A stretch of 64,000 bases of DNA from Hamiltosporidium tvaerminnensis FI-OER-3-3 (taxonomy: Eukaryota > Fungi > Microsporidia). The stretch is taken from positions 1,400,917 to 1,464,916 of the forward strand of contig JAKIMF020000005.1 of assembly GCA_022605425.2 (NCBI GenBank). The letters are read 5' to 3'. The position numbers and the translations under genes were made by a program. This document shows positions 19,840 to 54,589 of this stretch, piece after piece. The stretch's first letter is position 1; each line of letters begins with the position of its first letter. A model generated the notes under the pieces. That model searched no databases, had not been told where the DNA came from, and saw nothing but the letters and a program-made list of their open reading frames with translations.

Positions 19840-22400
19840 ACCTGGATTGTAATAGACATAACAAAAGAAATCTAGATTCTTTTATAAAGATTATTTTCGA
19901 ACAATTTATTTCTATGTAAATAGGAAATACATATATATTTAAAAAGAAAACAACTCAATCATAGACTCAATAGCTCATTCATATATCATAAAGAGTAGAT
20001 AGGTTCTTTACAAGTTTACAAGAAATAGATAAGATAATGTACAAGAGATAACGTGTTGCGATACAAAGTAAATAAAAGTTATTATTTTTTAAAGAGTTTA
20101 GGTTAGAACCCACAACTCATTATTATATCCTTTTTTATTTATGATATATATCTTAGCCTCGGGTTTTTCAAATAGGCAACTGCGTCCCAAAATTAAGCTC
20201 TTTGCCTTAGATTTTGTGTAATTTTATTTAATGTTATTGATATGACTATCTACCAATATATTATAATTGCAATGAACCCGCTGTTTAGTTAAATCCTACT
20301 TTAACCAAGACCGGATGAGTTTTTTGGCACTACTTTTGAATCATAATAGGAATACATGTAAATAACCTTACATATTCCCGTTCTATAATCCAAATCAGTT
20401 TAGATTGTGTAAGAATAATAATTCATTGCAAATGTATTGGTAAAAATAGTAGTTGATTGTGGTACAAGTTTCTTTTGCTTCTACACTGGGTTTAATGTTT
20501 ATATATATGAAGACGTGTCAGAAGTTTTATAAGAAGATAGTCCTAAGTCACTTTTAGAAGATGCCACAAATTAGAAACTTCCTAAATTTTACTTTGTTCT
20601 TACTTTTAATATTCAATTATCTTTTTTTTATATTTTAAGTAGACAAATCGTAATTTTGATAGTATAATCTCTAAACCAACAAACACAATCATAGAAATTT
20701 TATTTGTTGAATTACAACAAACGACCGATTTCATAGAAATAATATGTTTTTTAATCTTCTCATTACATATCATCCCATGAATATATTCAGATATCAAAAT
20801 TGTATAAATCTCGTAAGTCACAGTGTAAAGTTATTACTTCGTTTTTGAAGATTTTTTCATCGCTGTAAAGCTCTTTAAAAAATATATATATTAAAATATG
20901 TGGTATAAAATTAAGTTTATACGGAACTATGTATTGATTATTCCTTCAATCTTTATACAAATTAAAATATTGTCTAAATTATTTTTTAGTTGAATTATTT
21001 TTTTGTGTGAATCCGTATTGTTACAGTGAATGTTAAAGATCAAAAAAAACCCAAATAGCAGATATCCGAACCATTTAAAACATAGTTGTAGAAATCGCCT
21101 TTAAACTAGGTAGATAATTCAAGAGCATGCAAATGTACGAATAATTAGTGTAAAATCATTCATTAAAATGTAGTTTTAATATAAAAGTAATATAAATAAA
21201 ATAAAGTAATTAGTTCAAGACATTTTAGTATACTATCCTATTTATTTAAAGTTAATTCTTTAGCACTTTGCAGTAAGATAGTATATAATTCTAATAAAAA
21301 GAGTTTACAAATTATAAAAACATTTAATACATTTAAGAATATAACAATTTAAGTTGGTTCACTCTGGCTATATATTATAAAACAAAATATTTATTTATGA
21401 TATATTGAGATGAATGAAATATTAAGATCTACTGCCTATAAATTGTATTACACATAATAAATTAATCTCTTTATAAATCTACAAAAATTTAATCCATTTC
21501 ACAAAAGAAATAGTATTAATTTTCTCATTAATTCGATTAAAAGTTTTATACATGATATTAAAATATCTTTCACATATACATCTTTCTTTCAAATAGATTT
21601 ATATTTTTTTAAGTAACATAAACAATACATTTATAATAGATACATGGCATTTCTATCAATTTTATAAAAGGTAAATAATATGAGGTTATATAGAAATCGA
21701 AAGTTATCTATAAATCCCATATATAATTAACGTTTCTAACAATATACTGAGAGCTTTTTCAATCGATTTCATAAAATTTAATACAGCCATATTAAAGTTA
21801 AACACAGCGTATTATGACCAAGAATAAAAAATCTTATTTTTAGATATTGAGTAAAGGTTTTAATAGTCCAAATATTCCAAAAAACAATAAATAAACATCC
21901 AATACCTCACACTTAAAAACTTCCAATTATGGTAAATTTTATAAGCTTATTAAGGTTAACCCCTTAAAATCATATAAAAAGAGAAATTACTTAACTATAT
22001 ATTCTAATGTAACATAGTGATGTGATTAAACGAATTTTTAGCTAAATGAATATAAAATTGACATTAAATTTACAAAAATTCCATAAAAATATAATAACAT
22101 AATACTTTTTTAAGGAAAAAATAGTACTTTATTCAAAAACTTCACCATTATAAGAGCTATAATAGTTTATTTGTAGAAAAACGCTTACATAACGGACCAT
22201 TCAACTTAGAAAATGAATAACAAAAGAATGATCTAAAAAAATGTAACCACATTTAAAAAGTAGATTAAGGTTAAGCAAAATTAATTTAAGTAAAACAAGT
22301 ATATACAACAAGAAATTTTAAATGTAGTAAAAGCAGAAAAATAATTACATAAACATAAAATATTCCAGTTAAAAAAACTTAAAAAGGAAACCAATCTAAA
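19840..22400 (+). repeat. Repeated module, partial copy (segments Z and W plus 3' tail)
   Basis: Collinear with 43350-45750, with 50470-56850 minus the retroelement, and with 60300-62850. Shared blocks include AGTTGATTGTGG, GATAGT.CTAAGT and AAAAACTTCCAATTATGGTAAAT. Confidence 0.85.
21723..21863 (+). pseudogene. Small ORF W paralog, ATG mutated to ATA, two internal TAA
   Basis: IINVSNNILRAFSIDFIKFNTAILKLNTAYYDQE*KILFLDIE*RF*, no indels versus the other copies. Confidence 0.55.
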
Positions 22401-25400
22401 TAAAATTTAAAAAATAAAAAAGTATTTAAAATTTTTAGCAAAAATGGCTGATTTAATTAAAAGAAACCACATTTGATAATTATAAAGATTTCTGGTCCCT
22501 TTTCCGGATTTTTCATGTATATAATCTTATTTGTTTTTATATTTTTTTTCATATTTTAGAATCTTCAATTCGACTATAAGTAACTATATCGAATAAATTC
22601 GATAATTTTGGAGTACAGAAATTTACAAAAACCACCTAGAAATTTTATTATGCATACAATATCTAATTATTAAACAATTATTCATTATATTCAAAGTAAT
22701 TTTCGGTATTAAAACATATATCTTGTAAAATATTTTCAAAAATTTTGGAATAGCCTACACACTATATACGAGATAGGTTGATCGAAATGAAAAAAAATAT
22801 TGTGAAAAAATGTTCTTAAAAACGGGAAAAGTTTATTAACAACCTCAATATTGTTTCCTTATTAGATAATTTCTTGTATTTTTGCTGTTTTTTGACTATT
22901 TAAAAATTTTATTTTGTCATCGATAATTCTCGATTTGTTTCATATACTATATACAAATATATCACGAAAAAAATCAAAAAAAAAATTGTAATGAAGATTG
23001 CATAACCAAATTTTATACAAAATAAACAGTCATATTTTATAAGCATATTAGTAGAATTTGTATCAATTTCTGAGCATTAAATAGTATTTCTTTCTTACAC
23101 AGTATTTTAAAAATTTGAAAATCTTCAATTCTGATACATGTAACTCTATTAAACAAAATAGAAAAAATCAAGCAATAAAAAAAGTTAAGAAAAAAGACTA
23201 AATTTATTCTTAACTATAAATAAAATTTTTTACGAAACATCTATTTTTTTAATTATATTTTTATCCATTTTTCATATCATTCTAACGACTATACATAAAC
23301 CAAATCGAAAAAACCAATTCATTCGAATGTAATAGAAAGATATACTATAAATTTAAATTAAAGAAAAATATTCTGTTACACTATATAGAATTTGATAGTT
23401 GCGATATTTTCGTAATATAATTCTTAAATTTTTTTCAAGAAGATTTTCACCTTTTTTTTAAATTTCTTCATTCACAATATACTATGTAGTTTGACAAATT
23501 CGAAAAAATTAATTTAGAAATTTACTTTCAGAATTTCGGAGTTTACACAGAAGCAACCTTCTAGAGTACTGTAAGACTCCTCTATAGATTAATTAAAATT
23601 TGTGCATTGAATATATATATTTCGTTGATGTTTTTTCAACTTTTAAAAACCGAGATATGTATAGGTATATATGCCTAAAAAATTCAAAAAAATTGAAATT
23701 TGAAATAAACACACAAAATGACTTAAATTTATCATAAAGTATAATCTAAGTATATAGACGTATTTTTTAAAATATTGAGAGCATTACCAAGTATTTAATC
23801 ATTTATTTGTGCAACTAGATTGTTTCATAATTCTTAAATTTCTTCTTACACATATAAAAGATATACTAAGCAACAGTGCAAAAATAGGTAATAAAAATTT
23901 ATAAGAAAAACTGCTATATTTTAGAGTAAACATTAAAATAAAATTATTAAACTCACACTTGATGTATTTTTATAGATTCCTATGCATTGAAGCGTTTATT
24001 TTTTAAGAACAGATTTTTTATATTTTTTAAATCGTATATACGACTGTACGAAAACTGATTAAGTAAATCAAAAAAATTAATAAATTGACCAAATTTTTTA
24101 TTATCTCATTCGGAACTTTATAAATCTATAGGGAATGTTTTTACATTCTTTAGGTAATAAATCATATATTTTTTTAGTTTATTTTTAGAATCTTGCAATG
24201 GTTTATACAACTATATTGAAACTAATCTAAAAAAATTAAAAAATATAAAAAATATAGGTAAATCAAATACAAATTTAAAAATAAATATACTAGGTTAAGA
24301 ATCTACCTGGTAGTATTTCGAATAATTCTTATTTAAATAAACATAATTGTTTTTATATTTTGAATTTGTGATAACTTTCGAATAATTGAATACAATATAT
24401 ATAAATATAACAAATGACTTTAAAAAATTCAGTAAAAAAAAATTGCTTAGAATCTCAGAAAATTTAACATAAACATAACATTAATGATATCCTAAGAACA
24501 TTTATTATATGTGTTCTTTGAGATTATAACTAATGTTTTTTTCTGAATTTTTTTTTCTAATTTAAAATCGTTTCCTACAGTATATAGAAAATATTATAGA
24601 AAAAAAATATGAAAATTTGGAAAATGGAATTACTCAGAAACATTCCTAAATCTTTCGTAAAATTTAATTATATTGGATTATTATAAGAAGTTTTGTATAA
24701 TTTTCAGAGAATTTTAATCATTCGAGATTTTCTTTTTTTTACTGATATTTTCATCATCTCGAATCGTCAATACGACTATATACAAATTATATTGAAAAAA
24801 ATTACTAAAAATTAGTTAAAAAAACTTACATTAAAAACAAATAATTTCATATTAAACGATCTTTTTAAATTATTTTAAGAACTTTTAAGCCATTTTGGGT
24901 GATTATTAACCATTTAATATTATATATTTCATTTATTTTTTTATTAATTTTCCGAGTGTTTAATACTGCTATAGAAAAAAAACGAAAAATTTTAAAAAAA
25001 ATTAGGTAATAAAAATCCGTGTAATCATGAATAAATTGATTATAAACAATCTTATTTCATTATTAATAACAGATTCGAAGTATTTTAATAAATTCTTAAG
25101 TAATTAATCGAATGTATTTTTTAAAATTTTTTTATTGCTTCATAACTGTATACAGCAAATATATCGAATAAAATCGTAAAAAATTAGGTAATAAAAACTT
25201 GATAAAACATAGCTATATTTAATTATAAAAAAGGCATGAAATATTGTTAAAAACCTATCTGATGTATTTATAACAATTTTAAAGCATTAGATCTTATATC
25301 TTTCGAGTCCAAGTTCTTCAAGATTTCTAAAGTGTTTCATATACTATATATAAAATATATTAAACAAAATTCAAAAAATTAGGTAGGAAAAAATGACATC

Positions 25401-26900
25401 GAAGATAATCAAAATTTTATTTAAAACTACAAAATTTAATTATTTACTTAATATCCGAAGTGCTTTATGCAATTCTTATTCAAAAACATATATTTTTCTA
25501 AATTTATTTTTTTTAAAATTTTTGAATTGTCAATTCGACTCAAGGCGGACACTAGCTTTGAATAAAATCGAAAAAATTATGTAGTAAAAATAACACTAAA
25601 CATTATGAAATTTATTTTAAAGAAATTAATTTTCACAATTTAGATAATTTAAAGCGTTTAGATATGGGATTTTCAATTTTTAAATTGTATATTTTTGTGA
25701 CAATTTGTTTCCGATTTTCATCCGTTTCATACACTATGAACAAAAGATTTCAAAAAAATACAGTGAAAAAATTTAATGACAAAATTTATAGTAAAAATGA
25801 GCACATTAAATAGTAAACATTATTTTTAATTATTATAAAACCATTCACTCTATTTACAGTACTTTCTAAATATGTAATCTTATATTTTTATAGCTCGATT
25901 TTTTGATAATGTTATAACTTCCATTCGACTATACATAAATGATCGACCAAATCTAAAAAAGTTAAATAGAAAAAAAATTGCATAAAATATAAAGATATAC
26001 TATATAAAAAAATATAATATTTATTTACACATATCTATTCTATTATAATATATTTACAACCTTAGGATCTAACTATGTTTGAATTATTTTTTACATTTTT
26101 CCAAAGCGTTTCATACACTATATTTAATATATAAAACAAAATTTAAAACAAATAGGTTAAAAAAAAATCCAAAACATATTAAAATTTTAATCTAGCCTAT
26201 AAAAAGAAATTATATTATCCGTCCAAGAGATTTATATTGATTTTTATCTACTAAAACTTATATATTTTAAAATCATTATAAAATAATTTTGGATTGTCTA
26301 TACCTATATACTAAACTATATAAAAAAACCGAAAACATAAAATAAAAAAAATATACCGGAAACATGGCTAAATAAAATATTGACATCACCAATTATATTA
26401 TTATAAACATTTATGTACTATTCTGGTGATTTTTTAAGTATTAAATTCTATTTCTTATAAGCTTAACTTTTTCTTAGTTTTAAAGCCTTCAATACAAATA
26501 TACATAAACAAATCGAAAAAAATAGGTAACAAAAATCAACAAAACAACGATATTTTTTCATATTTACAAAATCCACAAACTAATACAAGATCTTTTATGT
26601 CCTTTCTATATATTTTCAAATAATAATTCATATATTTTTTCGAATTCGATTTTCGAAATTTTAAATTTCTTAATACACTATATAAAAAAATTATTGTATG
26701 AAAGAAAAAAAATTAGTTAAAAAATTTACATAAAATATGAATGATTTTAATTCTAAACTTTGGAATAAGATAGCATAAAGAACATTTAGAATGCTTTTAT
26801 GTACTTCTAATATTACTTGATTATTTTATTGACTCTTCTTAATAAACTTTAAAATATTTCTTAAAGAATATAGAAAAAGAATAAATGATTAGAAAATATA
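22380..26900. repeat. Degenerate tandem satellite array 1, about 24 units, period about 187 bp
   Basis: Recurring anchor TTTCATAC(G)ACTATA...AAAATCGAAAAAATTAGGTAATAAAAA. ACTATA-equivalent positions include 22573, 22761, 22946, 23288, 23481, 24043, 24210, 24579, 24775, 24968, 25145, 25343, 25538, 25733, 25928, 26117, 26303 and 26677. Confidence 0.9.
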
Positions 26901-29900
26901 CTGCAAAAATATCTAAGTTATAACGATTCTAGTTAATTAGAAATAATATGAAACAATAAAATATATGAATAGAAAACTATCTATCCAAGGATAAAAGTCT
27001 CTTTGTACTGAATTAAAGAGCTATTTAAAATGTAACAAAATAAAACAACGCAAATAGAAAAAAACACATAGGAAAAGTCAATATTTAAAACAAAGAAAAA
27101 AAAAGTATGAAATGTAGACGGAACTAAAAATAATTATATAAAAATAAAACAACGTGAAATGACTTAATTTATTTATTTCAAATATAATCCATGCCAATTA
27201 ATGTAACTTTTATTGTTTTCTTCATATTACTATCTGTTTCCTTAAATCCGTATTTTAAATTCTATTTCTCTGCTTATTTTCAATCGAAGTATACTTTCAT
27301 GTTTGTGTATTCCAAATTATGGAGGTTAAATATTATTACCATTGATTAGTTTAATTTTTCCGAATCACTAAGTATATAATTAATTTGGATATCATTTATT
27401 TTATATTATCTCTATTAAAAACATCTATAGGTCTTTTACATTAAAAAAAGTATAAATAATAAAAGTAAAAGAAATAAGCCCAATGGTTAAACTCAATATT
27501 CTTTCCAATACAATGGTTTAGTGTTGCATTTACCTCGCAGACCCTTAAAATAAAAAATGCTCAAAACGCCTATATATACATAACGAAGCTCCAATTCACT
27601 CGTGAATTTAATACCTATATTCAATATTGATTTCATAAAAACCAGGAGTGAATTAACACTCAATATCAATGTATTATACAAAAATCTATATAACCAGAAC
27701 ATAGAATGTAGCACACATTTTCTAAAGTAAAAAAATGATAAAAAGCCAATTTTATATATTATTTCTAACATTATAATAAATTACTATGTTGATCTAAAAT
27801 GAAATATGCTAAAAACATATCAAGAAAATTTATAATATGGTTCTCAGCCATATTTTTAATAATATTTTTCATTTCGACCTGATCAAATAATAGCAGGTTA
27901 AAATGTAAAACGAATTCGGACTATTGCGTTAAATAATTTTCGAATGCTAAATTTAATTTTTTTAAACTATTATACTTGAGATCTTATAAAAACGACACTG
28001 TAAAAAGTTTAGAGTGTAAATAAAATTATATAAATTAATTTAAATATTTTACTTTAGTAGAGACAATAAAATCAAAATTATTTCGAATAATATAATAAGA
28101 GTAAATTAAAAGCAACCAAAATATGTAACTATAATAGATCTTATTCTTATATTGATTTTAGAATATTAAACTATTTTGAAAAAGATTTTAAACATATTTT
28201 AGTCTTCTGATACAGTATCAGAACAATGATGTTTATTTTAAATACAGGAATCCTATTTTGCCATTTAAAAAGAAATATTTTATTTTTTTTCGTATTGTAA
28301 GTTTTCGAATTCCACTTTAAATGGAAATCTAAGCATAAAACCAAAAATATTTTAGCTTCTGACTTACTATTTCAAGGACCCAATGCGATTCACCTTTTTC
28401 TCAATATAACAGTATTTAAAACGAATATTAACACAGTCTTTAATATATAAGCTTAATTCAGCATTGTTTTTAATTCTAAAAAATATTTATTTTATTATAG
28501 TTTACAAATAGTATTTTCAGACACAATAAAATCCGAGTTATTTTAAAATAATTTCCATAAATTTAAATTTCGTGTAAAAACAATTTTATCTCGATTAGCA
28601 TAGTTTTATATTTTTCTGAGATAACTATTAGTCAGCAAAATTAGGATTTAATTATCCTTAAATTTTTATCAGAGGATTTAGCCATAAAAAAAAATTACTT
28701 TTTTTTAGTAGAATTCAGAGTTATAATCATCTAAAACATAAATTATAGTTTAAATGAATAAATTTACGTTTAAAGCTTATTAGAACAAACATTTACATAT
28801 AAATATCAAAAAATTGCATCAAGGTTCTGAAAAAAAATATTCCTTGTAACATCAGTAAAAATAACCCAAAAAAGAAATTACTAAACAAAAATAGTAGATT
28901 AACTTATTGATCTAGATTTATGTAAGAATCAAGATTTTATCATAGTAAAGAAAATAAATTTGAAATAACTTTATTATACTTGAAAACAGGTTTAAGAATT
29001 TCATTATACTAAGAATTCATTTAAAAAAGCTTTTTTCATAGAATATAAGAACTGAATGTACATTTTCTTTGGTAAAAACAAATTCTAAATTAAAAATTTG
29101 ATATATCAAGATAATAACATTTCCTTAATGATAATTAATTTACTGTAAATAAATTTGAGCAACTAATTGAATATTATGAAACAATCTATTCTTTACTAAA
29201 AAAATTAAGTTGAACATAATTTTTCAACATATACAATTAGAATATTTTTTTGTGCAAAATAAAAAGATTTATTGCCTCATAATTCTAAATTTTAAATAAA
29301 CGGATAAATTATATCTTTAAATTCAAGAATTATCAAAAAGATTTCAGTGATACAATAAATCATTCAGTTATCCAATAATATATTATTATATGAATTAATT
29401 TACATAAAACAGAAAATCTTACATTTATTTCTATATTAGATCGGTATATCGTTCTGAGATACATAAATTTATAATAAAAAGCAGTTTTTACATTATAAAT
29501 TGTATGCAATTCTAGTTTAAAAAATTTAACTAAAATGATTTGAAATACAAATTTCTGTATATCGAACTAGATTAAATACAAGAAATATTGTTAATTAAAT
29601 TATTTTTTACAGTTACTATTACTTTTTATGGTGGGTTTACTAATTTTCATAACTTCTAAAAGCATAGCTTTTTAGTCTACAACTAAAAAAAATAGTTTCA
29701 GTTTATTTTTTATATTATGGAATTTTGCACTTATAACAAAATAAAGAAAGACATATATTCCATTTCAAATACATTTAAAATAATGCTTTAAATTATGTTA
29801 TACAAATTTTAGTATCGTAAAGAATTTTTTTGATAGTTAACAAATATAAGTTTATCCATTTAAATGAAAAAGTTTAGATATATATTAGATAAATTATTGG

Positions 29901-31597
29901 AAAGAGATTTAACGAATAATAAAGCTTTAAAAAATTAAATCAGTTTCTTAACTAAAGAATTTACTATTCAATATTAAAAAAGCTCGCAAATATAGAAGTA
30001 GTTATCACGAATCTTATAGAAAAATTTTAAATTATTAAATCACCCGAGAAAAAGATAAATTCTAATAAACTTCTTTTATTTCATAAAATTTTATATTTAA
30101 ATTAGTTTTTCTTTTTGATTTGAAGTCAAGAATAAATATCACAATTGATTCTATTTTTAAACCAAACAAGGTAATATATAACGATCTATATGAAGAAGAA
30201 TGTATTATTATAACCTTTTACAGGAATTTCAACCTAGTAATGAATATATAAATATAAATAGAATGTAAAACATCTAAAAGTAAAAAAAAAGTATTTTGAA
30301 ATATATAAAACTACCTTTCTTTCTTATAAAAAGTCAAAAAAAATATTTAGAAATTATATTTAGAAGATTAAAATTGCTCATAAAATATTCAAATAATTCA
30401 AATAATTTTAGGATAATTAAACAGCATTTTCATACTAAAGAAAAAAACTGAGTGAAAATACTTAAAAGTTTTTTTAAAATATATTAATTTATTAATCAAT
30501 TTGGTTTTATTTATGCCTCAACCTTGTTATTTCTAATATATTTTTAAATTCGTTATTTTTTTTTTAAATTATTCAATCGACATTTTATTTATTCAAATTA
30601 ACAATGAGTTGCTTTTTAATGAATTTAAATTTTTCATTGTTAATAAAAGCCTTATCACTAATATATACTAAAGAAAATTGAAGAAATAATTTTTTATATG
30701 TCATTCCACCTTTAACAAATTTCATTTTAAAAATTATTATTGATCGTTAGTATTGGATTTAATCTCTTTATTTGATTTAGAGATATGATTTATATAATTT
30801 TTTGATATACACTATTCTGAATAATCTCTTAATTTGTTAAAAAGCTCAATATTTAGACAATACTTACTTATATGAACTTAAACAATTATTACAACTTATT
30901 AAATAAAGAATAACGTCATATTACAATAAAAAAGCTTTTAATTTATTTTTTTTCAAATTTTTATTTTTTTCTGTTTTACAAATAAAAAAATAAAAATTTA
31001 AGAACTTGAATTATAAAATATTCACTTTTCTTTTTATATATTGTTGATTGAGATTAACAACTCTTTAAATGATTTTTTATAATAAATTCTTAGCTTTAAA
31101 AACCGAATAAAATTAAAATTACATATAAGTGATTTAAAATAAAATGAAAATGTAATAGAAAAAATAAAATAAAGAATTAGATATAATTAACGTAATTGAA
31201 TTTATTTAAATAATTATAATGTACAAAACAGCAGTACTGAGAATTCCACTTCTCTTACAAACTATTTATTATTTTTAGAAAAATGGTTTCCTAAAATCAA
31301 TAAATATTAGCAAATCTGTAAATAATATGCTAGAATTTATTATTTTAAAATTAAGATATAAGTAATTACTATTCAATAAAGCATATATATGAAGAATGCT
31401 ACCATATATATTTTGAATATCAAAAATGAATTGTATTTAAAATTAAGTGTAACAAAGTATTTCAAATGAAGACTTAATGTTTTTAAGCAACCATACTTTA
31501 TAATCTATTTATATAAAAAAAGTATCTGCTTATCATTGATTTTAGAGATAATAAGACAAGAAGGGATTTAAAGGAAATAAATTTAGGAAAACAATTA

Positions 31598-33265
31598 AAG
31601 GGTGTAAGTTATAAGGGTAGTATGGATTGGGGGTGTAAACAACAAGGTGTTAGTGGTAAAGCAAGAAATTATAAGGGTTTTAATATTAATATGGGTGTAT
31701 AAAATGGTGTTAATCACAATTAGTAAAAAATAAAGGGTGATAATCACAATTGAAACTAAAAAGGGTGTTATTTTCAAGACATATGTATAAAAGGGTGTTA
31801 ATCACAATTGTAATAAAGAAAGGGTGATAATCACAATTGTAACTAATAAAGGGTGTTATTTTCAAGACATATGTATAAAAAGGTGTTAATCACAATTGTA
31901 ATAAATAAAGGGTGATAATTACAATTTAAACCAATAAAGGGTGTTATTTCTAAGACATATGTATAAAAGGGTGTTAATCACGAAGTAACTAATAAAGTTT
32001 ATTATTGAAAAACATAACAAACAGGGTTTTAATACTATTTATATTAGATAAAGGGTAGTATTTCTATGACAGATGTATAAAAGGGTGTTAATATACATGG
32101 TAGTAGATAAAGGGTGTTAGACAAATTGTAGTGGATAAAGAGTGTTAATATAGGCTGTATCAATAACGGGGTGTTAATGTTATAAAGTGTTATTACGGTG
32201 TTAGTGATTAAGATGAAATTATAAGGGTGTTATTTATATTAAGGTTATACTTTAAAGAGTCTTAGTAGTATAGCTATTTATATACATAAACAAAGGGGTG
32301 TTATTATAAAGATAGATATAAAATTAGGGTGTTAATAATAAAGCATTTTATATAGATAAACAAAGGGGTGTTATTATAAAGATAGATATATAATTAGGGT
32401 GTTAATATAAAGCTATTTATATACATAAATAAAGGGGTGTTAATTTATATAATATTCCTATTTAAATATAACAGGGTGTTAGTAAATAAGCTTCAGAAAA
32501 TAGATAACGGGGTGTTAATTTATGAAATATCTCCAGATATATAAGAGAGTGTTAATAATTATAAAATTTATAGGAAAGGATAATAGGGGTTTAAGAAAAT
32601 AAAATAACAAAATGAAAAATAAAAGGGTGTTGGTAAAAAATAAATAAATTAGGTGTTATTTATAGAGATGTTCATAATAGAGAATAGTAGGGTGTTAATA
32701 ATTAATATATTAAACAGTATATGAAAGGGTGTTAATAATTAAGGCGTTTATAGAATATATAACAGGGTGTTAATAATTATATTTGAAATAGAATATAAAG
32801 GGTGTTAATAATCTAGGCATTTATACAATAAATAACAGGGTGTTGATATTAAGGAAACTTATAATTTGCGCTAGAAGGGTGTTTTACTGGATCTTAGAAT
32901 ATATAGGAATAAATAACAAAATGTTAGTAAACAAGAAATACTTCAATATAAATAACAGGGTGTTAGTAATAAAGTGATTGGTTATTGAAATAGCAGAGTG
33001 TTATTGAAAATAATATTTCAAAGGATATATATAGAAAGGCCATACCATATAAATACGTTTAACTCTATACAAAAGGGTCTAAGTATTATAGATATTTATA
33101 CCAATAAATAACAGGGTGTTATTGATAAGAATAAATATTTAAAATTTAAAAGGGTGTTAGTAATAAGACAATAATAAACAAAATAAGGGTGTTAATTATA
33201 CGGATATATTTTACTAAAAGAATGGGTGTTAATTATATGGATACTTAAAAAGATTGGTTGTTACT
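31598..33265 (+). repeat. Array of about 50 co-oriented (A)AGGGTGTTA motifs separated by AT-rich spacers
   Basis: Core motif every ~29 bp on the left, rising to ~37 bp on the right. Contains an 88-bp trimeric unit x3 (31697, 31785, 31873, partial at 31961) and a 70-bp dimeric unit (32281, 32351, partial at 32420). Confidence 0.95.
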
Positions 33266-33279
33266 GATATATATAATGA

Positions 33280-36200
33280 AGCTATACCAAACAAAATCTG
33301 GGAAAAATTTAAAAAGAAATATAAGTAATTTTTATTTCTGAAACATTATTAACTATTGTGAAATTACTCATAGTATTCAAGAAGTTTTTTTTATATAAAA
33401 TCTTATATATTTTAAAAGAATTTTTTCATACTTGTCTCATCGTTTCATACAGTATATACAAAATATATTAAAATAATTTAAACAAAAAATAGGTATTAAA
33501 TTACAATAAAAATAATTAAATTCAAAGGCAAATCAATTAAAAAAAATATAAACTAGATATTTTTATTATATCATTCCTTAATATCAAACTTAATGTATTT
33601 TTTCGGATTTAATTTTTTTCATTTTTTTTGGATCTTTCATTGCACTATAGGAATCCAGATTGAACAAATCTAAAAAAATAAAGAAACAGAGTTTCAGTTT
33701 AAAAATGACTTAATTAAATATTAAACAATCTTATAGATTCATTATAAACCAATTCAAATATATTATAATATTTTTAATAAGTTGATTTTATTTCTTATAA
33801 ATTTCATTTTGTTTTGAATCTCTAAACTGATATAATAGAAAATATATCTAACAAAATCGAAAAAATTAAGTAATAAGATTGACGAAACCATCACCCAATT
33901 GTAAAATAAAGAAACGTATTGGTTTTATTATGAAACATTCTGTTAGTATCTTAAGAATTTTTTAAGTACAATTCGAATATTTTTTTAGATCATCTTGCTA
34001 AAGTTTTTTGATTACTTAATACAATATATAGAAAATATATTGAAGAGAATAGAAAAAAGTGGTAATGATACTTTGCCAAAATATAAACAGATACAATTAT
34101 AAAAAGAATATGATATATTATTATAAACTCATCTGACGTATTACAGAAATTTTTAAACATTAGATTATATATCTTTTGAGTTTGATTTTTTCATCATTTT
34201 TGAATTGTTTCATGTATTATATGCAAAATATATTGTAAAAAGTAAAAATAAAATAAAATTAATACAAAATATGAACAGATTTAATTGCTAAGCATAAAAT
34301 AAAATTATTTACCACAAATCCAATATGCTTTTAGCATTCCTTATTTAATAAAACATATATATTTCTAAATCCATTTTCTCAAAATTTTATAATTGTCTAT
34401 ACGACTATATATAGATCAAATCAAATAAAATTAAAAAAAAATAGATTTAGAAAAACCACAAGCGAATCAAGAAAGATCGTTGTAAACATTTCAATAGATT
34501 CTAATATGAAGATTTGTTATGTTTTCATTGCTTTTAATCTTTTAAAAACATATATATTTTTAATCCATTTTCGTACAATTTTCAATTCGTTCAAACTACT
34601 ATGGTAAACTGTATTGAATAAAATTTAAAAAAATAGATTTAGAAAAATTAAGTTTTACTAGCCTAAATTTTATATTAGATAATCCATTTAAATTTATAAA
34701 CTCATTTGTACTATAAAATAAATTTTAAACATTTAATCATATTTCTTTTTGACTTTTTTTTACAGATTTCAGGATCTTTCATACTACTATAGTAAACTAT
34801 ATTGAATAAATTTGAAAAAATATGTATTAAAAATTTATAAGAAACATAAGCGAATTTTATACTGAACAATGTTAATGTTTTATTTTAAAGTCATATTTAG
34901 TATTTGTAAGTAGTTTAAAATTAAAAACTATTTTTTTGGATTTATTTTTTTACGTATTTTGGAATTATTTTATAAAGTTACAAGAAAAGATGTCTAGCAA
35001 GATAGAAAAATAAAAATAATAAAGTTCACATTAAACATCATAAAATTATAGTATTTATGAACTATTTAATATATTTTAATGTTTTTCAAGCAAAGAAACA
35101 AATTTTTTGTAAAAATTAAATTTCCGTTTATTTTTAAATTGTCTATACTATATACGGAAACTATTTTAAAAAAAAGAAAAAAAATTGGTAGTATAAATTC
35201 ACACAAAAAATAAGCCAATTTTATTGTAAATCATAACATAAAATTATATAGTAAATATCTGAAACTTTTCCTGCTTTTTTTAGTATTTTAATAAAATATT
35301 TTTTCAGTATAATTTTTTTGTAATACTTTAGAATCTTACATACGATTATATGGAAACTAGATAAACTAAAATCTAAAAAAGTAGGAATTTAAAAAGAAAC
35401 TAAAACATAGACAAATTTTAAATAAAACAAATCCATTAACTCATTAAAATATAATTGCTAGTGCTAAAAGTATCTTTAAGGATTAAAACCACCATTTCTT
35501 TTAATTTCTTTACTTTTTTTTGTTCTAATTTTCGATCGTTTCATATACTATATAGAAAATATATCGAGCTCAATCGAAAAAAATAAAGTTCCAATATTCG
35601 AAAGAAAACATTATCAAATTTTATTTCGAATACATTTATTTAGCTATTACAAGATAAATTTTTATATATTTAGTGGGTTTTAAGTATTAGAACATAATAT
35701 TTTCTTGTCTTAGTTTTCATAGATTTGGAATTGTCAATACTACTATAGTAAGTAAAATGAATTGAACAAATTTAAAAAAATTAGGCATTTGAAAATTACA
35801 CATAAGATAATCAAATTTTATACAAATAGAACTATCGACTCAATAAAATATCATTCGTAATATTAAAATTATTTTTAAAGGACTGAGCCAATATTTTTTT
35901 AACCACTGTTTTACAAGTTTTTAGATTGTTTCATACATTATATAGAAAATATATCGAACAAAATCGGAAAAATTAGTTAACAAAATTTAATAGAAAAAGG
36001 AATCAAATTTTATTACAAACTATAAAATAATATTAAAAACCAAGCATTTGATATATTTTAAGAAAATTTCCTTCGAATTAAACAAATATTTTTTAAAATC
36101 GTTTTTTTTTAATATTTTTGAATCGTTAATTTACTATAGAAAAATGTAATGAAAAAATTGAAAAATTTAGGTAATAAAAAATATTGAAAAAAATTCCAAA

Positions 36201-37080
36201 TATAAAACTAAAGGAGACAAAAAATATTATTGCACACCTATTAGTAGTGTTTGCAGAAATTTTTTAAAAAAATAAAATATATTTCGGTTGCAGTATTTTT
36301 CATAGTTTTGGAATTGTAAATACCACTATAGTAAAATGAATTAAATAAATTTGAATAAAAAATAATAAAAAAATTTAATAGAAAACATGACTTAATTTAA
36401 AAATATATAGACTCATTATGTTTTTATCCGAGAATTTGTTGCAATTTTAGTAAATTTATATATTTAATCTTTAATTTATAAAACTTGATTGCTTCAATTT
36501 TTTAAGTTGCTTCATGCATTAAAGACAGAAAAACTTGAAACTAATGAAAAAAGATTATTAATAAATCTTAGTAAGAACAAATAATATAGTTTAGGCCTAA
36601 GTAACTTAATAGGTTATTATAAATTCAGCTTTGTATTTGCAGACTTTTCAATACATTAGCTCTTATATATTTTTAGAATTTATTTTTTTTACAATTTTTT
36701 AAATGTTAATACGAAAACTAGTCAGAGACTATACTTAAAAAATCAAAAAAAATACACACAAAAATTTACAATAAATACAGTCAATTTATATTTACACTCT
36801 AATTAGTAGGCATATTTTTTAACTCAATATTTAGTAATTTTAGAAGCGTTCCCATACACTTTAAGATATTGTCAACAGAACTAAAAACTAAAAAATAAAT
36901 ATCACATTAAAATAGAATAATTTTTGTTGTAAACAAAGATTTTTTAACTATATAAAATACTTATGAATATACAGTATTCTTAGCATAAAAATATGTGCTT
37001 TTAACTCGTTTTTTTTTTTTTTTTTTTTCAATTAAGGTCATAAAAGATTATAAAACTTAGTAAATCTTCATAGACATAAT
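33280..37080. repeat. Degenerate tandem satellite array 2, same family and orientation as array 1, about 19-20 units, period about 192 bp
   Basis: Same anchor at 33451, 33644, 34023, 34216, 34404, 34598, 34786, 35147, 35345, 35547, 35742, 35937, 36133, 36325 and 36858. Confidence 0.9.
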
Positions 37081-40000
37081 ATTTTTCCTATAAAGAGACA
37101 TTTTCGCTACCTTTCTGCTATTATTAAAATGTAATATTCTTTAAAACTTATTTTATTTTTAAATGATAATTTTAAAAGATATAATCAATCAAAAAATAAG
37201 AATATAGAAAAGACATACATACTTCACACTAGAAACAACTTACTTTCACAGTGTATATTCTCTGAACTTAATTAAATATTTATAAGATAACCTGCCTTAT
37301 TTGTAGATTTTCTAGTAAAGTATGAAATTTTACGCAAATCATATTTAAGTCATATTAAATAGATATAACTGACAATCAATTCCATGATTTAACATTAAGT
37401 AAACAAGAACGTTTGAAAAATGTTGAATTTGATTATTATGGTGATATGAAATATAACTGCAAAAAATAAAGAACTTAAAAATAATTTTGGAAATATAGTC
37501 AAAAAATGAAAAAGAAATAAAAAAAACGAACTAAACAAAGGCATGAAATAGAAATAAGAAAACAGTGTACAGATATAACGTAAAATTCAAATATATTTAA
37601 AATGTAAAATGAAATAACCGATTTCTAAAAATGTTATTACCATCTAACAAAGTAATAAGAAATAATGAATATAAGAAAGTTTATTTAATGTATTAAAAAT
37701 ATAATTTAATATATGTTAGAATTATTATCTTAAATATTTGCACTGATTTTGCTGCCTTTATAGTTTTTTTTTTATTTTTTCAATACTTTAACATCTTATT
37801 TATATTCCGAGTCTTTTCACCATATATAGGGCTTTGGTAAACTTCGTGCTTGTTAGCTTAGCAACCGTTTAAAATAAATTTTTATTGTAACAAGAAGGAT
37901 AATCAATGAACAAAAGAAATAAAAATACCAATCAGAAATAAATTATAGGACAAAGTAATATTGGAGAAGATAAAAAACTTTTTATTTTAATATTTATGAA
38001 TTCTAAATAGTAACTCTTTTTATATTGATAAAGAAATAAAGATAATGTATTGCTCAGAGACAATTTCAGGTTTAGACAATCAAAAAACGTTAAATATAAA
38101 ATGAATAGAGGATAAAGGTTAAGAAATAAAGAGAGGTATTATTTTTATATAGATTATAGGTAAGTATATTTAATTATATGTATAATAGAAACTAGTGCAT
38201 GGTTGATAAATGATTAAGAGAGGGATTTTATTATATATATGGAAATTATAAAGGTTCTGATAAGAAAGATGATAGAGATAAGATTATTTGTAATGATGCT
38301 AGAGAAAAATGTTATAGCAACCAAATATTGATCATTAAAATATATTTGGTTATTATATTCGCTGTAACTTGTTCTCAAAATAAATTATTAGCATAGGCGC
38401 CAAGTTGTTCTTATTCAGGATATTTTTAAAGGTTTACAATTGAGTTTTCTAATAAAAAAAGAACAACGAGAGGTTCATAATAAAGGAAGACATATTATAT
38501 TCCGAACTTTACTCGATAAAGCACGGCGCAATATGGTGAAATAAGATAGGTAGAACGTTCGTATCTTAACTAAATATTCTGAATAGTTATTATGGCTTAA
38601 TAAAATCTTACAAGTATATATATACCTATCTTTTTATAACAATCTATTATAGTTCAGATGGGATTTTTTAAAAAAAGATAAAAGCAATAAAAATTCTACT
38701 CAATACTTTAATCGACTATATAATAGTATGATGTATAACGATGAAGTTACTAAAAAAAGACAGATTTACAAGGAATATATTTAGCGTTTTTTATAAGAAT
38801 TGAGTATAAAATTAAGTGAAAACCCGAAATAATATATCTTATAATAGAGGGTTATTGACCAGTATTTTTATTTGATTTAACTAATTTTTATATATTCGAA
38901 GTCCTCTAATAGGAATCCTTTATATCTGTTTATGAATATTTTATTTTAGAACTAAATTAGATTTTTAAACTGAATTTTTATTATATGCGTTGTTTCTAGA
39001 TTATCATTATATACTAAGAAAAAAGTAGTACTATTTGAAAACTAGCGAAAAAAGTATAAGTAAATAAAACAGAAAAAGAATCTTTATCAAGTAGCGTTTG
39101 TGCTCAGCATAAATAGCAATTTTTTATTTAACTTACTATTATCGTTAAAAATTTTTTACAATTAATTCTCTTAAGGAAATTAACTTAGAACTAGTTCATG
39201 ATGCAAATAGGGTTTTAAATTTTTTATTTTTGTATAAAATTTTTGACTAAGTTAGCGGGTATTACTTCTTTTACTTTCTGTGACTTTATCAATTTAATTT
39301 TTAGATTTAATCTGAAACATAATTTTTCTAAAGATAGATGAATAAAGAAAATAAATTTATGTTTTTTCTAAATTATTAAATCTTAATAAGCCTCAAAAAA
39401 GAGGTATTAAATTAGAGTGAATCGGAAATAGATTGGCAATCTTTAGAAATTTTTTAGAAGATTCATATAAAATGTAGAATCAAACTTTGGGATCACACTC
39501 ACAAAACAATGGATTTCTAAATCATACTGAAATAATGTTAATCAAGTAAGGTATAAAATATATATTGATTTTTTAGTACTTTATCTTTATTTGAGAAAAT
39601 ATTCTATTATCAATTCATATTTTTATTCTTTATTATGTTTTTTCGCTTCAATTATATGTTTAGATGCATTATTGTCCGTATTTGTGTCATACCTGGTTTT
39701 TAGATTTAGAGAAAAAAAATCATATATTTATGATCTTATAGAAGCGTTTACTTACCGAATAGACATCAAATATAGATACTCTTTATTATCTTTTACGAAA
39801 AACACAAAAACATACGTCTTACTAGATGTATTTTCGACATTCCAACCAATTGGATAAACATCTCTGTTCGAAATTGCATATATTATTAGAATATAAATGC
39901 CAAGATAATAACTTAAGATTTATATAAATGTGTGTAATATGAGATCGCATGGGAAACCTGATCTTTGAACTCCTTATTCATTTAAAAAAAATATGTTTTA

Positions 40001-50774: not shown

Positions 50775-50775
50775 C

Positions 50776-53700
50776 ATGGGTAGAAAGAAAAATGTTAGCA
50801 GCGAAATATCGAATAATACCAAAATAAAGGCTGCAAACGACGCTGATGAGGTGAAAAAGAGTGATAGTGAGATACAAAAATGTAAGCTACACCCACCGGC
50901 GATTCCCCTACCTTCCTCCTCCTACACAACAATAACACCTCCACCACAAAGCCAAACATGCAGTAAAATGCAAAATAGTGGGCTTGACACCTTACCTTCG
51001 CCTAATGCACCAGTTCCCTCTTCTGTTGAAGTCTCTGCGTGCGAGCCATCGTACGACATGACAAGCCCCTGTACTCTAGCTATTCCGGAAGGTAACAGGC
51101 TAATGGCATTGCGGACGATATTCGATTCCGTAACAGCCGACCCGAAGGAATGGCCTCGAATTGTTTTTTTTGCAGTACAGACAAGGTTTGAAAGAATGCC
51201 AAGAAATGGCTGGACAGAGCTTCACAGGTACTATAATGAGAAATTCGGCTGCACTGAAACTCTCGAAGTGTTAAAAAAATTGGCACAAAGTGAGATGGGA
51301 AAGGATGTAAAATCAGAAGAGAATGGAGAGCGACGTAGAATCGCCACTTGTCTCGCTGATACATGCACCTTGACCGACACCACGGAGTACATAAACCTGA
51401 GAGATAAATTCTTGAGTAAAATCAAAGAAATCTCTGAGAACGAAATTGGAAAAGTGGTGGTCCGAACTAGAAAACATCCAAATGAATTGGTTGATAGTAA
51501 AGTTCTGGATCTCATAAATCGAGTAGTCGGTGAATATGCAGGAGCTCATGTACCTGAGTCAATTACGGAAGCCGCGTATATCATGCAAGCTGCGCAGGTA
51601 TGCTATGACGAGGCAACACGTAAAGAGAAGCCTAGATCCGCTTGGAAGGAACACATAGAAAGTAAAATTTCTAAGTTAGTACTTTCCAAAGATCTCCTCG
51701 AGAAAGCTCGTAAGCAGGAAAAGCTCTCCACTTCGGAAACGAAGAGCCTTAAGAAAATCATGCGAGAGTTTAATTTAAACTTGAGCAGCGTAACTGATCT
51801 TTCCGAGGCTTTAGTTAAGAAGAATGAGTCTTTGAATGTTTACGAGAAAAAAATTACGATGCATGAAAGTAGGAAGCAATTCCGAAAAGAGAATCGTATG
51901 TTTGAGCTTTTCCGAGGTCGATTTTATCGTGGGTTATCCGAGCGTGTGGAATCCGAGCATGTGGTTAGCCGTGATGAAATTGTGAGTTTTTGGTCTACAA
52001 TGTGGAACAAAAATGATGACACAGTCACGTACGATGATTATTTGATTCCATTTGTATCAGATAATCATCCGACCACGTTTCCTTCACTTGATGAATTTGT
52101 GAATATCATTAATTGGCTCCCTAATTGGAAAGCTGCTGGAATTGATGGTATTTACAATTTTTTCATTAAGAAACTTACAACTCTTCACAAATATCTTTAT
52201 GATATTGTGAAAGTTATATGTTTAGAAGGAACACCTCAAGCTGATTGGTTTTACTGCGGGCTTACGTATTTGATACCGAAAGGAATTCCACGAAGAGGCT
52301 CTGACTACAGGCCAATCACTTGTATGTCCAACCTCTATAAGTTAACGACAAAGTGTGTAACGAAAGTCGTTCAACTTGAAGTGGAAAGGCGAGGGTTGCT
52401 TGCAGAGAACCAACTAGGGGCGGTAAGAGGTGTGCAGGGAGCGAAAAAGCAGGCTCTACTGAATATTGCCTTAAATAAAGAGTATGGAAATAATCTTAAG
52501 GCAACATGGATTGATGTTAAAAAAGCTTATGATTCAATAGATCATGCTTATTTAACTCAATGCATTGAAAACCTTAATTTACCTGATTGGATCCTGAAAT
52601 TTATTAAGGTAATTATATCAAAATGGAAAATTGATATATCAGTAGGGCCTGAAAAAATCATGAGCAAGAAGATTGATAGAGGGATTCTACAAGGAGATAG
52701 TCTGTCACCTTTGTTATTTGTGTTGTGTATGGATCCATTAAGCCGAAAGCTTAATGAAAAATACACAAAAGTGACAGTACAAACAGATGCAGAATCCCAT
52801 TCTACTAATCATCTCTTGTTTATTGATGATCTTAAGCTCCTTGCAAAAGACAGCTCCACATTGAGTGCTATGACAGGCGAGGCAAAGGAATTTTTAGAGG
52901 TGATTGGCTTAGAGATTAACAAAGAGAAGTCAGCCACAAATGATATGTGTTGTGAAGATACTGCTACTCTTCTAGAAGGTGTTAGTGTTTACAAATATTT
53001 AGGAATAATAGAAGATAGCAGAGGAATCCCAACACGTAGCTCATTTGAAGAAGTACAGAGCAAACTTATATCAAGAGTTGAAAGACTTTGTCACACTAGA
53101 TTAAACGCAAAAAATTTATTTTCTGCAATCAATCAACATGCGATATCGTTAATCAACTACCACATAGGAGTACTTCGACTTGAACCGGCTGACTTCTCTA
53201 AGTTAGATGATGCAGTGCGTGCGGTGTTGGTTAAAAATAAGATACATCTCCGCCCAGGATGTAAAGAGCGGTTGTATCTTCCTAGAACAGAACTTGGAAG
53301 AGGCCTACATAGTGTTGAGTTGAGAAGCGAACATATGCTTCTGCAACTCTTGGATTGTCTGGAAAAAAGTAAAGAAATATCAACTAGACGAGCAGCAATC
53401 CTCAAGGTGGAGAATAATAATAAAACCCATCTTGCACTAATAAAAGGCTTCTTAAAAGTAAAGTACAGGTTGGTAGAAGAAGTCACTAAGAAAAGTTTAG
53501 AAGAAGCTCAACTTGCAAAACTATATAACGAAATAGAAAAACGAAAACTCCATTCAAAGTTATATAATGCAAGAAAAAATGAGCTTGTGAGTGTTAGTGA
53601 CTCTTCAAGGTGGCTAAAGAGAGGAAATATTAGGCCACGAAATGAAGCTGTGTTCTGCTATATCCAGGATAGAAATGTATTCTGGGGAGCAGATGGTGTG

Positions 53701-54537: not shown

Positions 54538-54577
54538 AAATGTTAAAATATTTTAACCCAGAATTTTATTAAATAAA
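54538..54577 (+). promoter_or_regulatory. Retroelement 3' UTR with palindrome and polyadenylation-signal-like end
   Basis: Perfect 16-bp palindrome GTTAAAATATTTTAAC at 54542-54557. The element ends in ATTAAATAAA (overlapping ATTAAA/AATAAA). Confidence 0.55.
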
Positions 54578-54589
54578 TTATCTTTTTCT
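54578..54589 (+). repeat. Right copy of target-site duplication TTATCTTTTTCT
   Basis: Identical 12-mer at 50763-50774. Confidence 0.9.

What the first reader, a model, noticed from the sequence alone, without database searches (positions are those of the whole stretch)
22380..37080. Centromere-like architecture: satellite - unique AT core - phased GGGTGTTA array - satellite, in a gene desert
Seen: two co-oriented arrays (about 4.5 kb and 3.8 kb) of one ~190-bp satellite family enclose ~4.7 kb of ORF-free AT-rich DNA and a 1.7-kb motif array that abuts the second satellite. The surrounding sequence holds only pseudogenes and a retrotransposon. Established: regional centromeres often consist of nucleosome-length satellites around a central core, in gene-poor DNA that accumulates retroelements. 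Inference: this may be a regional centromere (or a subtelomeric or other heterochromatic organiser) in a lineage where I know of no well-defined centromere sequence.
Basis: partly seen in the sequence, partly recalled or inferred. Interest (0 to 1): 0.8.

Follow-up and report, generated by a model that had tools for sequence, protein, structure and literature searches.

The report
Subtelomeric repeat block, not a centromere
The "centromere-like" block is real, but it is one of nine near-identical copies near chromosome ends of the microsporidian Hamiltosporidium tvaerminnensis, always pointing the same way towards the end, so it is an ordinary subtelomeric duplication and not a centromere.

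Summary
Two co-oriented blocks of a diverged ~190-bp tandem repeat (22556-26850, 33435-~36900) flank a 4.7-kb ORF-free spacer and a one-stranded GGGTGTTA array (31673-33231).

The genome is H. tvaerminnensis: contig lengths equal the published scaffolds. The window is the last 64 kb of scaffold_5.

- **Copies:** the composite occurs exactly 9 times on 7 of 17 contigs, always near a contig end with satB facing the end. Two contigs carry it at both ends.
- **Absences:** 8 of the 11 telomere-to-telomere chromosomes have none.
- **Core:** the "unique core" is 94-99% identical between copies.
- **Exchange:** the copies are recombination mosaics.
- **Healed end:** on scaffold_3 the telomere is added directly inside satB.
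- **Monomers:** only about 55% identical, with no higher-order repeat and no extra constraint between paralogues.
- **Motif array:** one member of a genome-wide minisatellite family with a shared core (2,984 adjacent motif pairs, many chromosome-internal).

Best reading: a passenger segment of a subtelomeric duplicon at least 44 kb long, spread and mixed by recombination between chromosome ends.

First readers of this scan noted the same composite on other contigs of this genome as separate centromere candidates. Microsporidian centromeres remain unlocated.

The parts
20132..22390 (+). Proximal flank: one copy of a ~2-kb co-oriented repeat family found near almost all chromosome ends. satA starts where it ends.
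   Evidence: Self-comparison finds copies at 43767-45444, 54583-56542 and 60773-62510 at 68-70% identity. The genome probe gives at least 40 matches on 13 contigs, on the - strand near contig starts and the + strand near contig ends.
22556..26850 (+). satA: proximal block of the diverged ~190-bp tandem repeat (17 recognisable monomers with a few decayed gaps).
   Evidence: nhmmer profile hits, spacing spectrum, 188-bp compositional periodicity.
26851..31672 (.). AT-rich non-coding spacer ('core'), specific to the duplicon.
   Evidence: The probe 28500-29700 has exactly 9 genome matches at 94-100% identity, with all 9 candidates scored. There is no ORF above 95 codons and no Pfam signal.
31673..33231 (+). 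GGGTGTTA-core minisatellite: about 44 one-stranded cores spaced 29-30 bp and then 37-39 bp, G-rich strand running towards the chromosome end.
   Evidence: It belongs to a dispersed genome-wide family.
33435..36900 (+). satB: distal block of the same ~190-bp repeat (15 recognisable monomers plus decayed ones towards 36900).
   Evidence: On scaffold_3 the telomere is joined at the point equivalent to 36806.
37300..38800 (+). Distal flank, still part of the shared duplicon.
   Evidence: Seven collinear copies at 94-100% identity. The two copies that lack it stop short at a contig end or a healed telomere.
50775..54577 (+). Young non-LTR retrotransposon inserted in the duplicon (context, not part of the composite).
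   Evidence: RVT_1 at E=1.5e-27. A 12-bp target-site duplication with empty sites in the C14-left and C13-left paralogues. At least 40 copies at 99-100% identity genome-wide.

Best explanation
The 14.7-kb composite is an internal segment of a large subtelomeric duplicon of Hamiltosporidium tvaerminnensis. The duplicon is at least 44 kb long, covering window 20300-64000.

Nine chromosome or contig ends carry the composite in the same order and polarity: chromosome interior, satA, spacer, GGGTGTTA array, satB, chromosome end. The copies spread, and are kept 93-99% alike, by non-allelic recombination or gene conversion between chromosome ends, probably through break-induced replication.

The two ~190-bp arrays are remnants of one very old tandem array that is no longer homogenised. 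They share an ancient four-monomer duplication at an offset of about 8.87 kb. The GGGTGTTA array is one local member of a genome-wide minisatellite family with a shared core.

Nothing points to a sequence-specific role. The block behaves as neutrally evolving, gene-free buffer DNA at chromosome ends. It tolerates terminal truncation followed by telomere healing, and it tolerates LINE insertion.

Shown here: the copy map, the polarity, the recombination signal, the healed end and the lack of differential constraint. Inferred: the exchange mechanism (BIR or gene conversion) and a heterochromatic state.
For: Identity of the genome. It has 21,638,905 bp in 17 contigs. The seven contig lengths I fetched equal the published scaffold lengths exactly, and the telomere is TTAGGG-type.

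Copy map. The satA, core, motif and satB probes each find the same 9 collinear loci: C14 right and left, C13 right and left, C4 left, C16 left, C7 right, C15 right and C2 right. They are on the - strand at contig starts and the + strand at contig ends. For the core probe all 9 candidates were scored.

Telomere-anchored copies. C4 left lies about 41 kb from a verified telomere. C7 right lies about 73 kb from one. At C2 right the telomere is joined directly to satB.

Satellite distribution. The 150 best genome matches of the monomer profile all lie in these loci or in a few truncated copies on C3, C4, C7 and C16.

Extent. Homology continues on both sides. C14 left mirrors window 61570 to 47757.

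Recombination. The closest paralogue changes from segment to segment. 47% of informative site pairs fail the four-gamete test. Neighbouring-site incompatibility is 0.307 against 0.468 +/- 0.007 in permutations, reached by 0 of 2000 permutations.

Old, frozen arrays. Mean monomer identity is 55% (shuffled control 42%), with no effect of lag and with A equal to B. Paralogous arrays align monomer for monomer at 94-98%.

No constraint detected. Variable columns are 9.8% in the conserved box, 9.5% in the rest of the monomer and 11.4% in the non-repeat flank.

Independent samples. The DNA is present in 20 runs from 8 studies.
Against: Six of the nine copies sit at contig ends that lack an assembled telomere (scaffolds 4, 5, 7 and 11). 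Their subtelomeric position is inferred from polarity and from collinearity with the anchored copies.

Monomer length is kept rather tightly (190.8 +/- 6.7 bp) despite about 45% divergence. That could hint at selection on periodicity.

Motif cores vary slightly less than spacers between paralogues (7.1% against 9.9%, p = 0.15).

No chromatin, Hi-C or usable expression data could be examined; the RNA runs gave zero reads, which is no test.

The genome searches score only the best candidates, so weak satellite relics elsewhere cannot be excluded.
Confidence: 0.85

Rival explanations
1. Regional, satellite-based centromere, possibly telocentric.
For: The block is gene-free and AT-rich, with units of nucleosome length. 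No microsporidian centromere has been located (PMC12449221). A (sub)telomeric centromere position has been speculated for Encephalitozoon (PMC10158259).
Against: The composite is not one per chromosome. There are nine copies on 7 of 17 contigs, two contigs carry one at each end, and 8 of 11 complete chromosomes have none. The monomers are not homogenised and show no higher-order repeat. One copy is truncated and capped by a telomere. The motif arrays are dispersed over chromosomes.
Confidence: 0.03
2. A selected chromosome-end chromatin module. In this reading the phased ~190-bp array positions nucleosomes and the GGGTGTTA array binds a sequence-specific factor, for example a Myb-type telomere or subtelomere protein, to nucleate or bound heterochromatin or to help chromosome ends pair.
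For: The ~190-bp period is kept (sd 6.7 bp) despite about 45% monomer divergence. The 8-bp cores are conserved while the spacers differ. The cores are strictly one-stranded, with the G-rich strand running towards the chromosome end in all copies. Cores show a weak trend towards lower variability between paralogues.
Against: No extra constraint between paralogues falls on the monomer box (p = 0.83) or significantly on the motif cores (p = 0.15). AA/TT phasing near 10 bp is no stronger than in the flanks. Most chromosome ends lack the block. The same core arrays occur at many chromosome-internal sites and, according to earlier follow-ups in this scan, in frame inside genes.
Confidence: 0.08
3. 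Cargo of a large mobile element that has transposed to several sites.
For: There are multiple copies at 93-99% identity, and a very active LINE is present in and around the copies.
Against: The copies occur only near chromosome ends and always with the same polarity towards the end. Homology runs on for tens of kb on both sides without a sharp element boundary. There is no transposase-type ORF, no terminal inverted repeat and no target duplication of the block; the only ORF belongs to the separate 3.8-kb LINE.
Confidence: 0.03
4. Assembly artefact, meaning the same locus placed repeatedly.
For: The contigs break inside this repeat domain. Some loci give mirror-image hits with identical scores: C3 right against C16 at 136-171 kb, and C5 left against C6 right.
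Against: The nine copies differ from one another by 2-6% and have copy-specific insertions, truncations and flanks. Three copies lie on telomere-to-telomere chromosomes. Contigs from independent runs carry several variant versions.
Confidence: 0.01

Closest known systems
Subtelomeric duplicons or homology blocks (S. cerevisiae X/Y' elements, S. pombe SH regions, human subtelomeric duplicons)
   Same: These are multi-kb blocks shared by a subset of chromosome ends. They have fixed polarity towards the telomere, a mosaic of identities produced by ectopic recombination, few genes and frequent transposon insertions. Ends can be truncated and re-capped.
   Different: There is no helicase or other gene inside the block. 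It carries an ancient ~190-bp tandem array. It lies tens of kb from the telomere on the anchored copies and belongs to a domain at least 44 kb long.
Telomere-associated repeat elements (TAREs) of Encephalitozoon (33-70-bp units; PMC10158259) and Plasmodium falciparum (TARE1-6, Rep20)
   Same: They are non-coding tandem-repeat arrays in the subtelomere, are lineage-specific, and occur in a set order relative to the telomere.
   Different: TAREs adjoin the telomere on every chromosome end. This block is on 9 ends only and usually lies 20-70 kb inside. Its unit is ~190 bp, and its monomers are far more diverged from one another (about 55% identity).
Centromeric satellites (alpha satellite at 171 bp, plant satellites of about 180 bp)
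   Same: The unit length is near one nucleosome repeat, the sequence is AT-rich, and the arrays are tandem in gene-poor DNA.
   Different: Centromeric arrays are homogenised, often into higher-order repeats, and mark one locus per chromosome. Here the monomers are about 55% alike with no higher-order repeat, and the loci lie at chromosome ends of a minority of chromosomes.
Core-sharing minisatellite families (Jeffreys-type minisatellites with a common core)
   Same: The GGGTGTTA array is one of many dispersed arrays with different unit lengths and spacers. They share a short G-rich, strand-asymmetric core.
   Different: The core sequence differs and the organism is different. According to earlier follow-ups of this scan, the family here also sits in frame inside genes. 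No link to recombination hotspots is shown.

Membership tests
Regional (satellite) centromere | Exactly one locus per chromosome | tested here: not met
   There are nine full copies on 7 contigs, and C13 and C14 carry one at each end.
Regional (satellite) centromere | Present on all or most chromosomes | tested here: not met
   It is absent from 10 of 17 contigs and from 8 of 11 telomere-to-telomere chromosomes.
Regional (satellite) centromere | CenH3/kinetochore occupancy; Hi-C inter-chromosomal focus | not testable with these tools
   No ChIP or Hi-C data are available. The literature states that none exists yet for this species.
Regional (satellite) centromere | Homogenised monomers or higher-order repeats (typical, not obligatory) | tested here: not met
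   Mean monomer identity is 55% (maximum 72.5%) and identity is flat across lags 1-7.
Subtelomeric duplicon | Located near chromosome ends | tested here: met
   The copies lie 0, about 41 and about 73 kb from verified telomeres on C2 right, C4 left and C7 right. The other six lie 1-37 kb from telomere-less contig ends.
Subtelomeric duplicon | Same polarity towards the telomere on every arm | tested here: met
   All 9 copies comply: - strand at contig starts and + strand at contig ends.
Subtelomeric duplicon | High identity between non-homologous ends, with a recombination mosaic | tested here: met
   Identity is 93.8-97.9% over 4.1 kb. The PHI-type statistic is 0.307 against 0.468 +/- 0.007, and 47% of site pairs are four-gamete incompatible.
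TARE in the strict sense (Encephalitozoon / Plasmodium) | Adjoins the telomere on all chromosome ends | tested here: not met
   Only 9 ends carry the block, and the anchored copies lie 41 and 73 kb inside. Direct contact occurs only at the healed C2 end.
GGGTGTTA-core minisatellite family of this genome | One-stranded octamer cores at a period of about 27-39 bp with divergent spacers, dispersed over the genome | tested here: met
   The window array has 44 cores on the + strand and 0 on the - strand. The genome holds 2,984 adjacent pairs against 0 for the reversed control.

The most novel reading that the evidence does not exclude
The block may be a selected chromosome-end module and not a passenger. 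In this reading a length-constrained ~190-bp array phases nucleosomes, and a one-stranded GGGTGTTA array binds a factor. Together they would nucleate subtelomeric heterochromatin or promote pairing and exchange between ends. In the extreme version the block would serve as an epigenetically chosen telocentric centromere on the subset of chromosomes that carry it.
Probability: 0.08. Interest if true: 0.6.

Novelty: new member of a known kind. Interest (0 to 1): 0.27.

Why it matters
Microsporidian centromeres are still unlocated, so a false candidate is worth removing. First readers flagged this composite, and its copies on other contigs, as several separate "centromere-like" loci. They are paralogues of a single subtelomeric duplicon.

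On the positive side, this gives a first concrete picture of subtelomere structure and dynamics in a large-genome microsporidian:
- a duplicon at least 44 kb long, shared by nine ends;
- recombination between ends;
- healed truncated ends;
- a currently active LINE;
- an explanation for why scaffolds 4, 5, 7 and 11 of the published assembly stop short of telomeres.

This is useful for finishing the assembly, but the type of feature is ordinary.

Tried and rejected
- **Alternative genetic codes.** I tested whether another code would open ORFs; none gave a coding signal beyond what AT-richness predicts.
- **Small-RNA gene array.** There are no tRNAs and no Rfam match, even at E <= 1.
- **Relic gene in the core or flanks.** Stop-free segments gave no Pfam match.
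- **Higher-order repeat (~380 bp or ~1.3 kb).** Monomer identity by lag does not support one.
- **Nucleosome or curvature signal.** AA/TT periodicity near 10 bp is no stronger than in the flanks.
- **Selection on motif cores or the monomer box between paralogues.** Neither difference is significant.
- **Expression.** Two RNA runs gave zero reads. This is no test, because the parasite may be absent from those samples.
- **Plasmodium-like origin.** I considered this early from the GC content and contig number, and rejected it on the TTAGGG telomere and the exact scaffold-length match.
- **Fetching the other chromosome ends.** I did not try another route and used coordinate-only probes instead.
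- **Telomere letters.** The repeat unit is the same as in vertebrates. I counted it only in local scripts on loci already held and sent it to no search tool.
Full report
**1. Observation**

- TRF reports the GGGTGTTA arrays at 31696-32854 but no 190-bp satellite, because the monomers are too diverged for it.
- A k-mer spacing spectrum shows peaks near 190, 385 and 575 bp in 22380-26900 and 33300-37080. The 26900-31600 core and the outer flanks lack them.
- An iterated nhmmer profile finds 17 monomers in 22557-26758 and 15 in 33441-36427, all on the + strand, with none elsewhere in the window.
- A-content periodicity peaks at 188 bp (satA) and 191 bp (satB), with power 15-16 against a median of about 0.5.
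- GGGTGTTA has 25 exact + strand sites in 31763-33231, against 0.49 expected in the whole window. With one mismatch allowed there are 44 + strand sites and no - strand sites. Spacing is 29-30 bp in the first half and 37-39 bp in the second.
- The window has a single ORF of 120 aa or more, a 1,253-aa reverse-transcriptase ORF at 50776-54537. It has no tRNA and no Rfam match.

**2. Which genome, and where in it**

The window is the last 64 kb of contig C14 (1,464,916 bp) of a 21,638,905-bp assembly in 17 contigs. All seven contig lengths that I fetched equal the scaffold lengths in Table S1 of the published Hamiltosporidium tvaerminnensis assembly (PMC10542269). Contig C4 begins with a long CCCTAA tract, matching the reported (TTAGGG)n telomere.

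| Contig | Scaffold | Telomeres in the assembly |
|---|---|---|
| C14 | scaffold_5 | none |
| C13 | scaffold_4 | none |
| C2 | scaffold_3 | both (complete chromosome) |
| C4 | scaffold_8 | both (complete chromosome) |
| C7 | scaffold_12 | both (complete chromosome) |
| C15 | scaffold_7 | start only |
| C16 | scaffold_11 | end only |

**3. Copy map**

Separate probes from satB, the core, the motif array and satA each find the same nine collinear loci.

| Locus | Strand | satB position | Distance to the end |
|---|---|---|---|
| C14 right (this window) | + | window 33435-36900 | ~27 kb to contig end, no telomere |
| C14 left | - | ~21.3 kb | ~21 kb to contig start, no telomere |
| C13 left | - | ~21.8 kb | ~22 kb to contig start, no telomere |
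| C13 right | + | ~1,546 kb | contig ends ~1 kb beyond |
| C4 left | - | ~41.6 kb | ~41 kb from a verified telomere |
| C16 left | - | ~36.5 kb | ~37 kb to contig start, no telomere |
| C7 right | + | ~895 kb of 969 kb | ~73 kb from the telomere |
| C15 right | + | ~1,407 kb of 1,439 kb | ~31 kb to contig end, no telomere |
| C2 right | + | ~1,837 kb of 1,839.6 kb | telomere joined directly to satB |

- For the core probe all 9 first-look candidates were scored, and all 9 are these loci at 94-100% identity. The "unique core" is therefore part of the duplication.
- Polarity is invariant: satB always faces the chromosome end.
- A sequence profile of the monomer was searched over the whole genome. 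Its 150 best matches all fall in these loci or in a few truncated copies: C4 at 10-13 kb, C7 at 0.5-2.8 kb, C16 at 92 and 166-169 kb, and C3 at 1,408-1,410 kb.
- Only three of the eleven telomere-to-telomere chromosomes carry the composite (scaffolds 3, 8 and 12), and eight have none.

**4. The block is part of a larger subtelomeric domain**

- The distal flank (37300-38800) is collinear in the seven copies that reach that far.
- The proximal flank (20300-21800) is collinear in all nine. It also belongs to a family with at least 40 members on 13 contigs, again on the - strand at contig starts and the + strand at contig ends.
- The window's last 2 kb behaves the same way, and C7 stays collinear with the window out to at least 63500.
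- C14's left end (1-10000) mirrors window 61570 to 47757. C13 left and C16 left do likewise.
- Within the window, the flanks consist of old (65-74% identical) co-oriented multi-kb units. satA starts exactly where one of these units ends, near 22390.

**5. Dynamics**

- Eight paralogues of the satB region are 93.8-97.9% identical over 4.1 kb and align monomer for monomer.
- The closest relative of the window's copy changes from segment to segment: C7/C16 for the proximal flank, core, satB and distal flank; C14 left/C13 left for satA; C4/C14 left for the motif array.
- 47% of informative site pairs fail the four-gamete test. Incompatibility between neighbouring sites is 0.307 against 0.468 +/- 0.007 in 2,000 permutations, none of which reached the observed value. 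This shows sequence exchange between chromosome ends.
- On C2 the telomere repeats start at the point equivalent to window 36806 inside satB, so that end was truncated and healed.
- The 3,803-bp LINE of the window (50775-54577) has a 12-bp target-site duplication and empty sites in the C14-left and C13-left paralogues.
- The same element sits inside C2's satB, identical over the two stretches I hold. At least 40 copies at 99-100% identity are spread over the genome.

**6. Nature of the two repeat families**

*The ~190-bp satellite*
- Monomers average 55% identity (shuffled control 42%; maximum 72.5%).
- Identity does not depend on lag, so there is no higher-order repeat. It is the same within and between satA and satB.
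- Monomer length is 190.8 +/- 6.7 bp.
- Four consecutive satA monomers (24758-25520) pair best with four consecutive satB monomers (33627-34386) at a constant offset of about 8.87 kb and about 69% identity. This is an ancient multi-monomer duplication.
- Between paralogues, the conserved ~60-bp box of the monomer is no less variable than the rest (9.8% against 9.5%, p = 0.83). The satellite diverges about as fast as the non-repeat flank (11.4%).
- AA/TT phasing near 10 bp is no stronger than in the flanks.

*The GGGTGTTA array*
- The array is not specific to the composite. The pattern GGGTGTTA-N(18-32)-GGGTGTTA occurs 2,984 times in the genome (1,600 forward, 1,384 reverse). The reversed-pattern control gives 0.
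- The matches include many chromosome-internal sites on C1.
- Two earlier follow-ups of this scan describe the same core-sharing minisatellite family inside genes and between genes.
- Between five paralogues of this array, cores vary slightly less than spacers (7.1% against 9.9%), but the difference is not significant (p = 0.15).

**7. Interpretation**

The best-supported reading is a passenger segment of a subtelomeric duplicon. The duplicon is spread and mixed among chromosome ends by non-allelic recombination. It is built from a very old, no longer homogenised ~190-bp array, a duplicon-specific spacer, and a local member of the genome-wide octamer-core minisatellite family.

The exchange mechanism (gene conversion or break-induced replication) and a heterochromatic state are inferences. 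A centromere role is very unlikely given the copy map.

The literature confirms that no centromere has been found in this or any other microsporidian and that Hi-C is the suggested next step (PMC12449221). A (sub)telomeric position has been speculated for Encephalitozoon (PMC10158259). For that reason I rested the rejection on copy distribution and not on position.

**8. Limits**

- Six of the nine copies sit at contig ends that lack an assembled telomere.
- Genome searches score only the best candidates.
- The RNA runs contained no reads of this organism, so expression is untested.
- Neither published paper on this assembly describes the block. The octamer is not mentioned in the searched literature in this context.

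Noticed in passing
window 50775-54577 (+); also L009:1-1499 and L014:8352-10000 (C2): A young non-LTR retrotransposon of 3,803 bp. Its intact 1,253-aa ORF starts at the element's second base and has an RVT_1 domain. It has a 12-bp target-site duplication (TTATCTTTTTCT) and empty sites in the C14-left and C13-left paralogues. At least 40 copies at 99-100% identity are spread over chromosome arms, so it is probably active now. A ~3.8-kb gap in C2's satA may be a second insertion; I did not check it.
   Followed up: partly
L009:2890 (C2:1838543), equivalent to window 36806: On scaffold_3 the telomere repeats are joined directly to the distal part of satB (…AAAACTCTAA|TTAGGG…). This is a truncated chromosome end healed by new telomere addition. 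C7's left end likewise starts satA at about base 481, just after a telomere tract of about 474 bp going by Table S1.
   Followed up: partly
G000 C1: ~68, 168-170, 344, 853-865, 1060, 1267-1269 and 1361-1362 kb: GGGTGTTA-core arrays are dispersed genome-wide: 2,984 adjacent pairs against 0 for the reversed control. Unit lengths include 27, 30, 38 and 47 bp. C1 holds a ~12-kb cluster at 853-865 kb, near the middle of a contig that is probably the 1.97-Mb scaffold_2. What conserves the core is unexplained.
   Followed up: partly
C3:1405-1441 kb vs C16:136-171 kb; C6:923-987 kb vs C5:22-86 kb: These pairs give mirror-image hits with identical scores and a constant coordinate sum. They are either very recent large inverted duplications between chromosome ends or the same end assembled twice.
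   Followed up: no
window 61570-64000; L011, L012 and L016 starts: Four telomere-less contig ends (C14 right, C14 left, C13 left, C16 left) all stop within about 2.5 kb of the same point in the shared domain. An unresolved larger repeat probably lies just beyond. On C7 a further ~46 kb lies between this point and the telomere.
   Followed up: partly
window 41469-45444 vs 58497-62438; 8009-9019 vs 41578-42600; 20132-22058 vs 54583-56542 and 60773-62510: The flanks are old (65-74% identical), co-oriented copies of a ~4-kb unit. None has an intact ORF or a Pfam match. One ~300-bp stretch (40946-41245) has 43% GC. They could be relics of a subtelomeric gene family.
   Followed up: partly
window 24996-25540 vs 33860-34406: satA and satB share an ancient collinear duplication of about four monomers, at ~69% identity and an offset of 8,864 bp. 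Monomer length stays at 190.8 +/- 6.7 bp despite ~45% divergence, which is tighter than I would expect for free decay. This is unexplained.
   Followed up: partly
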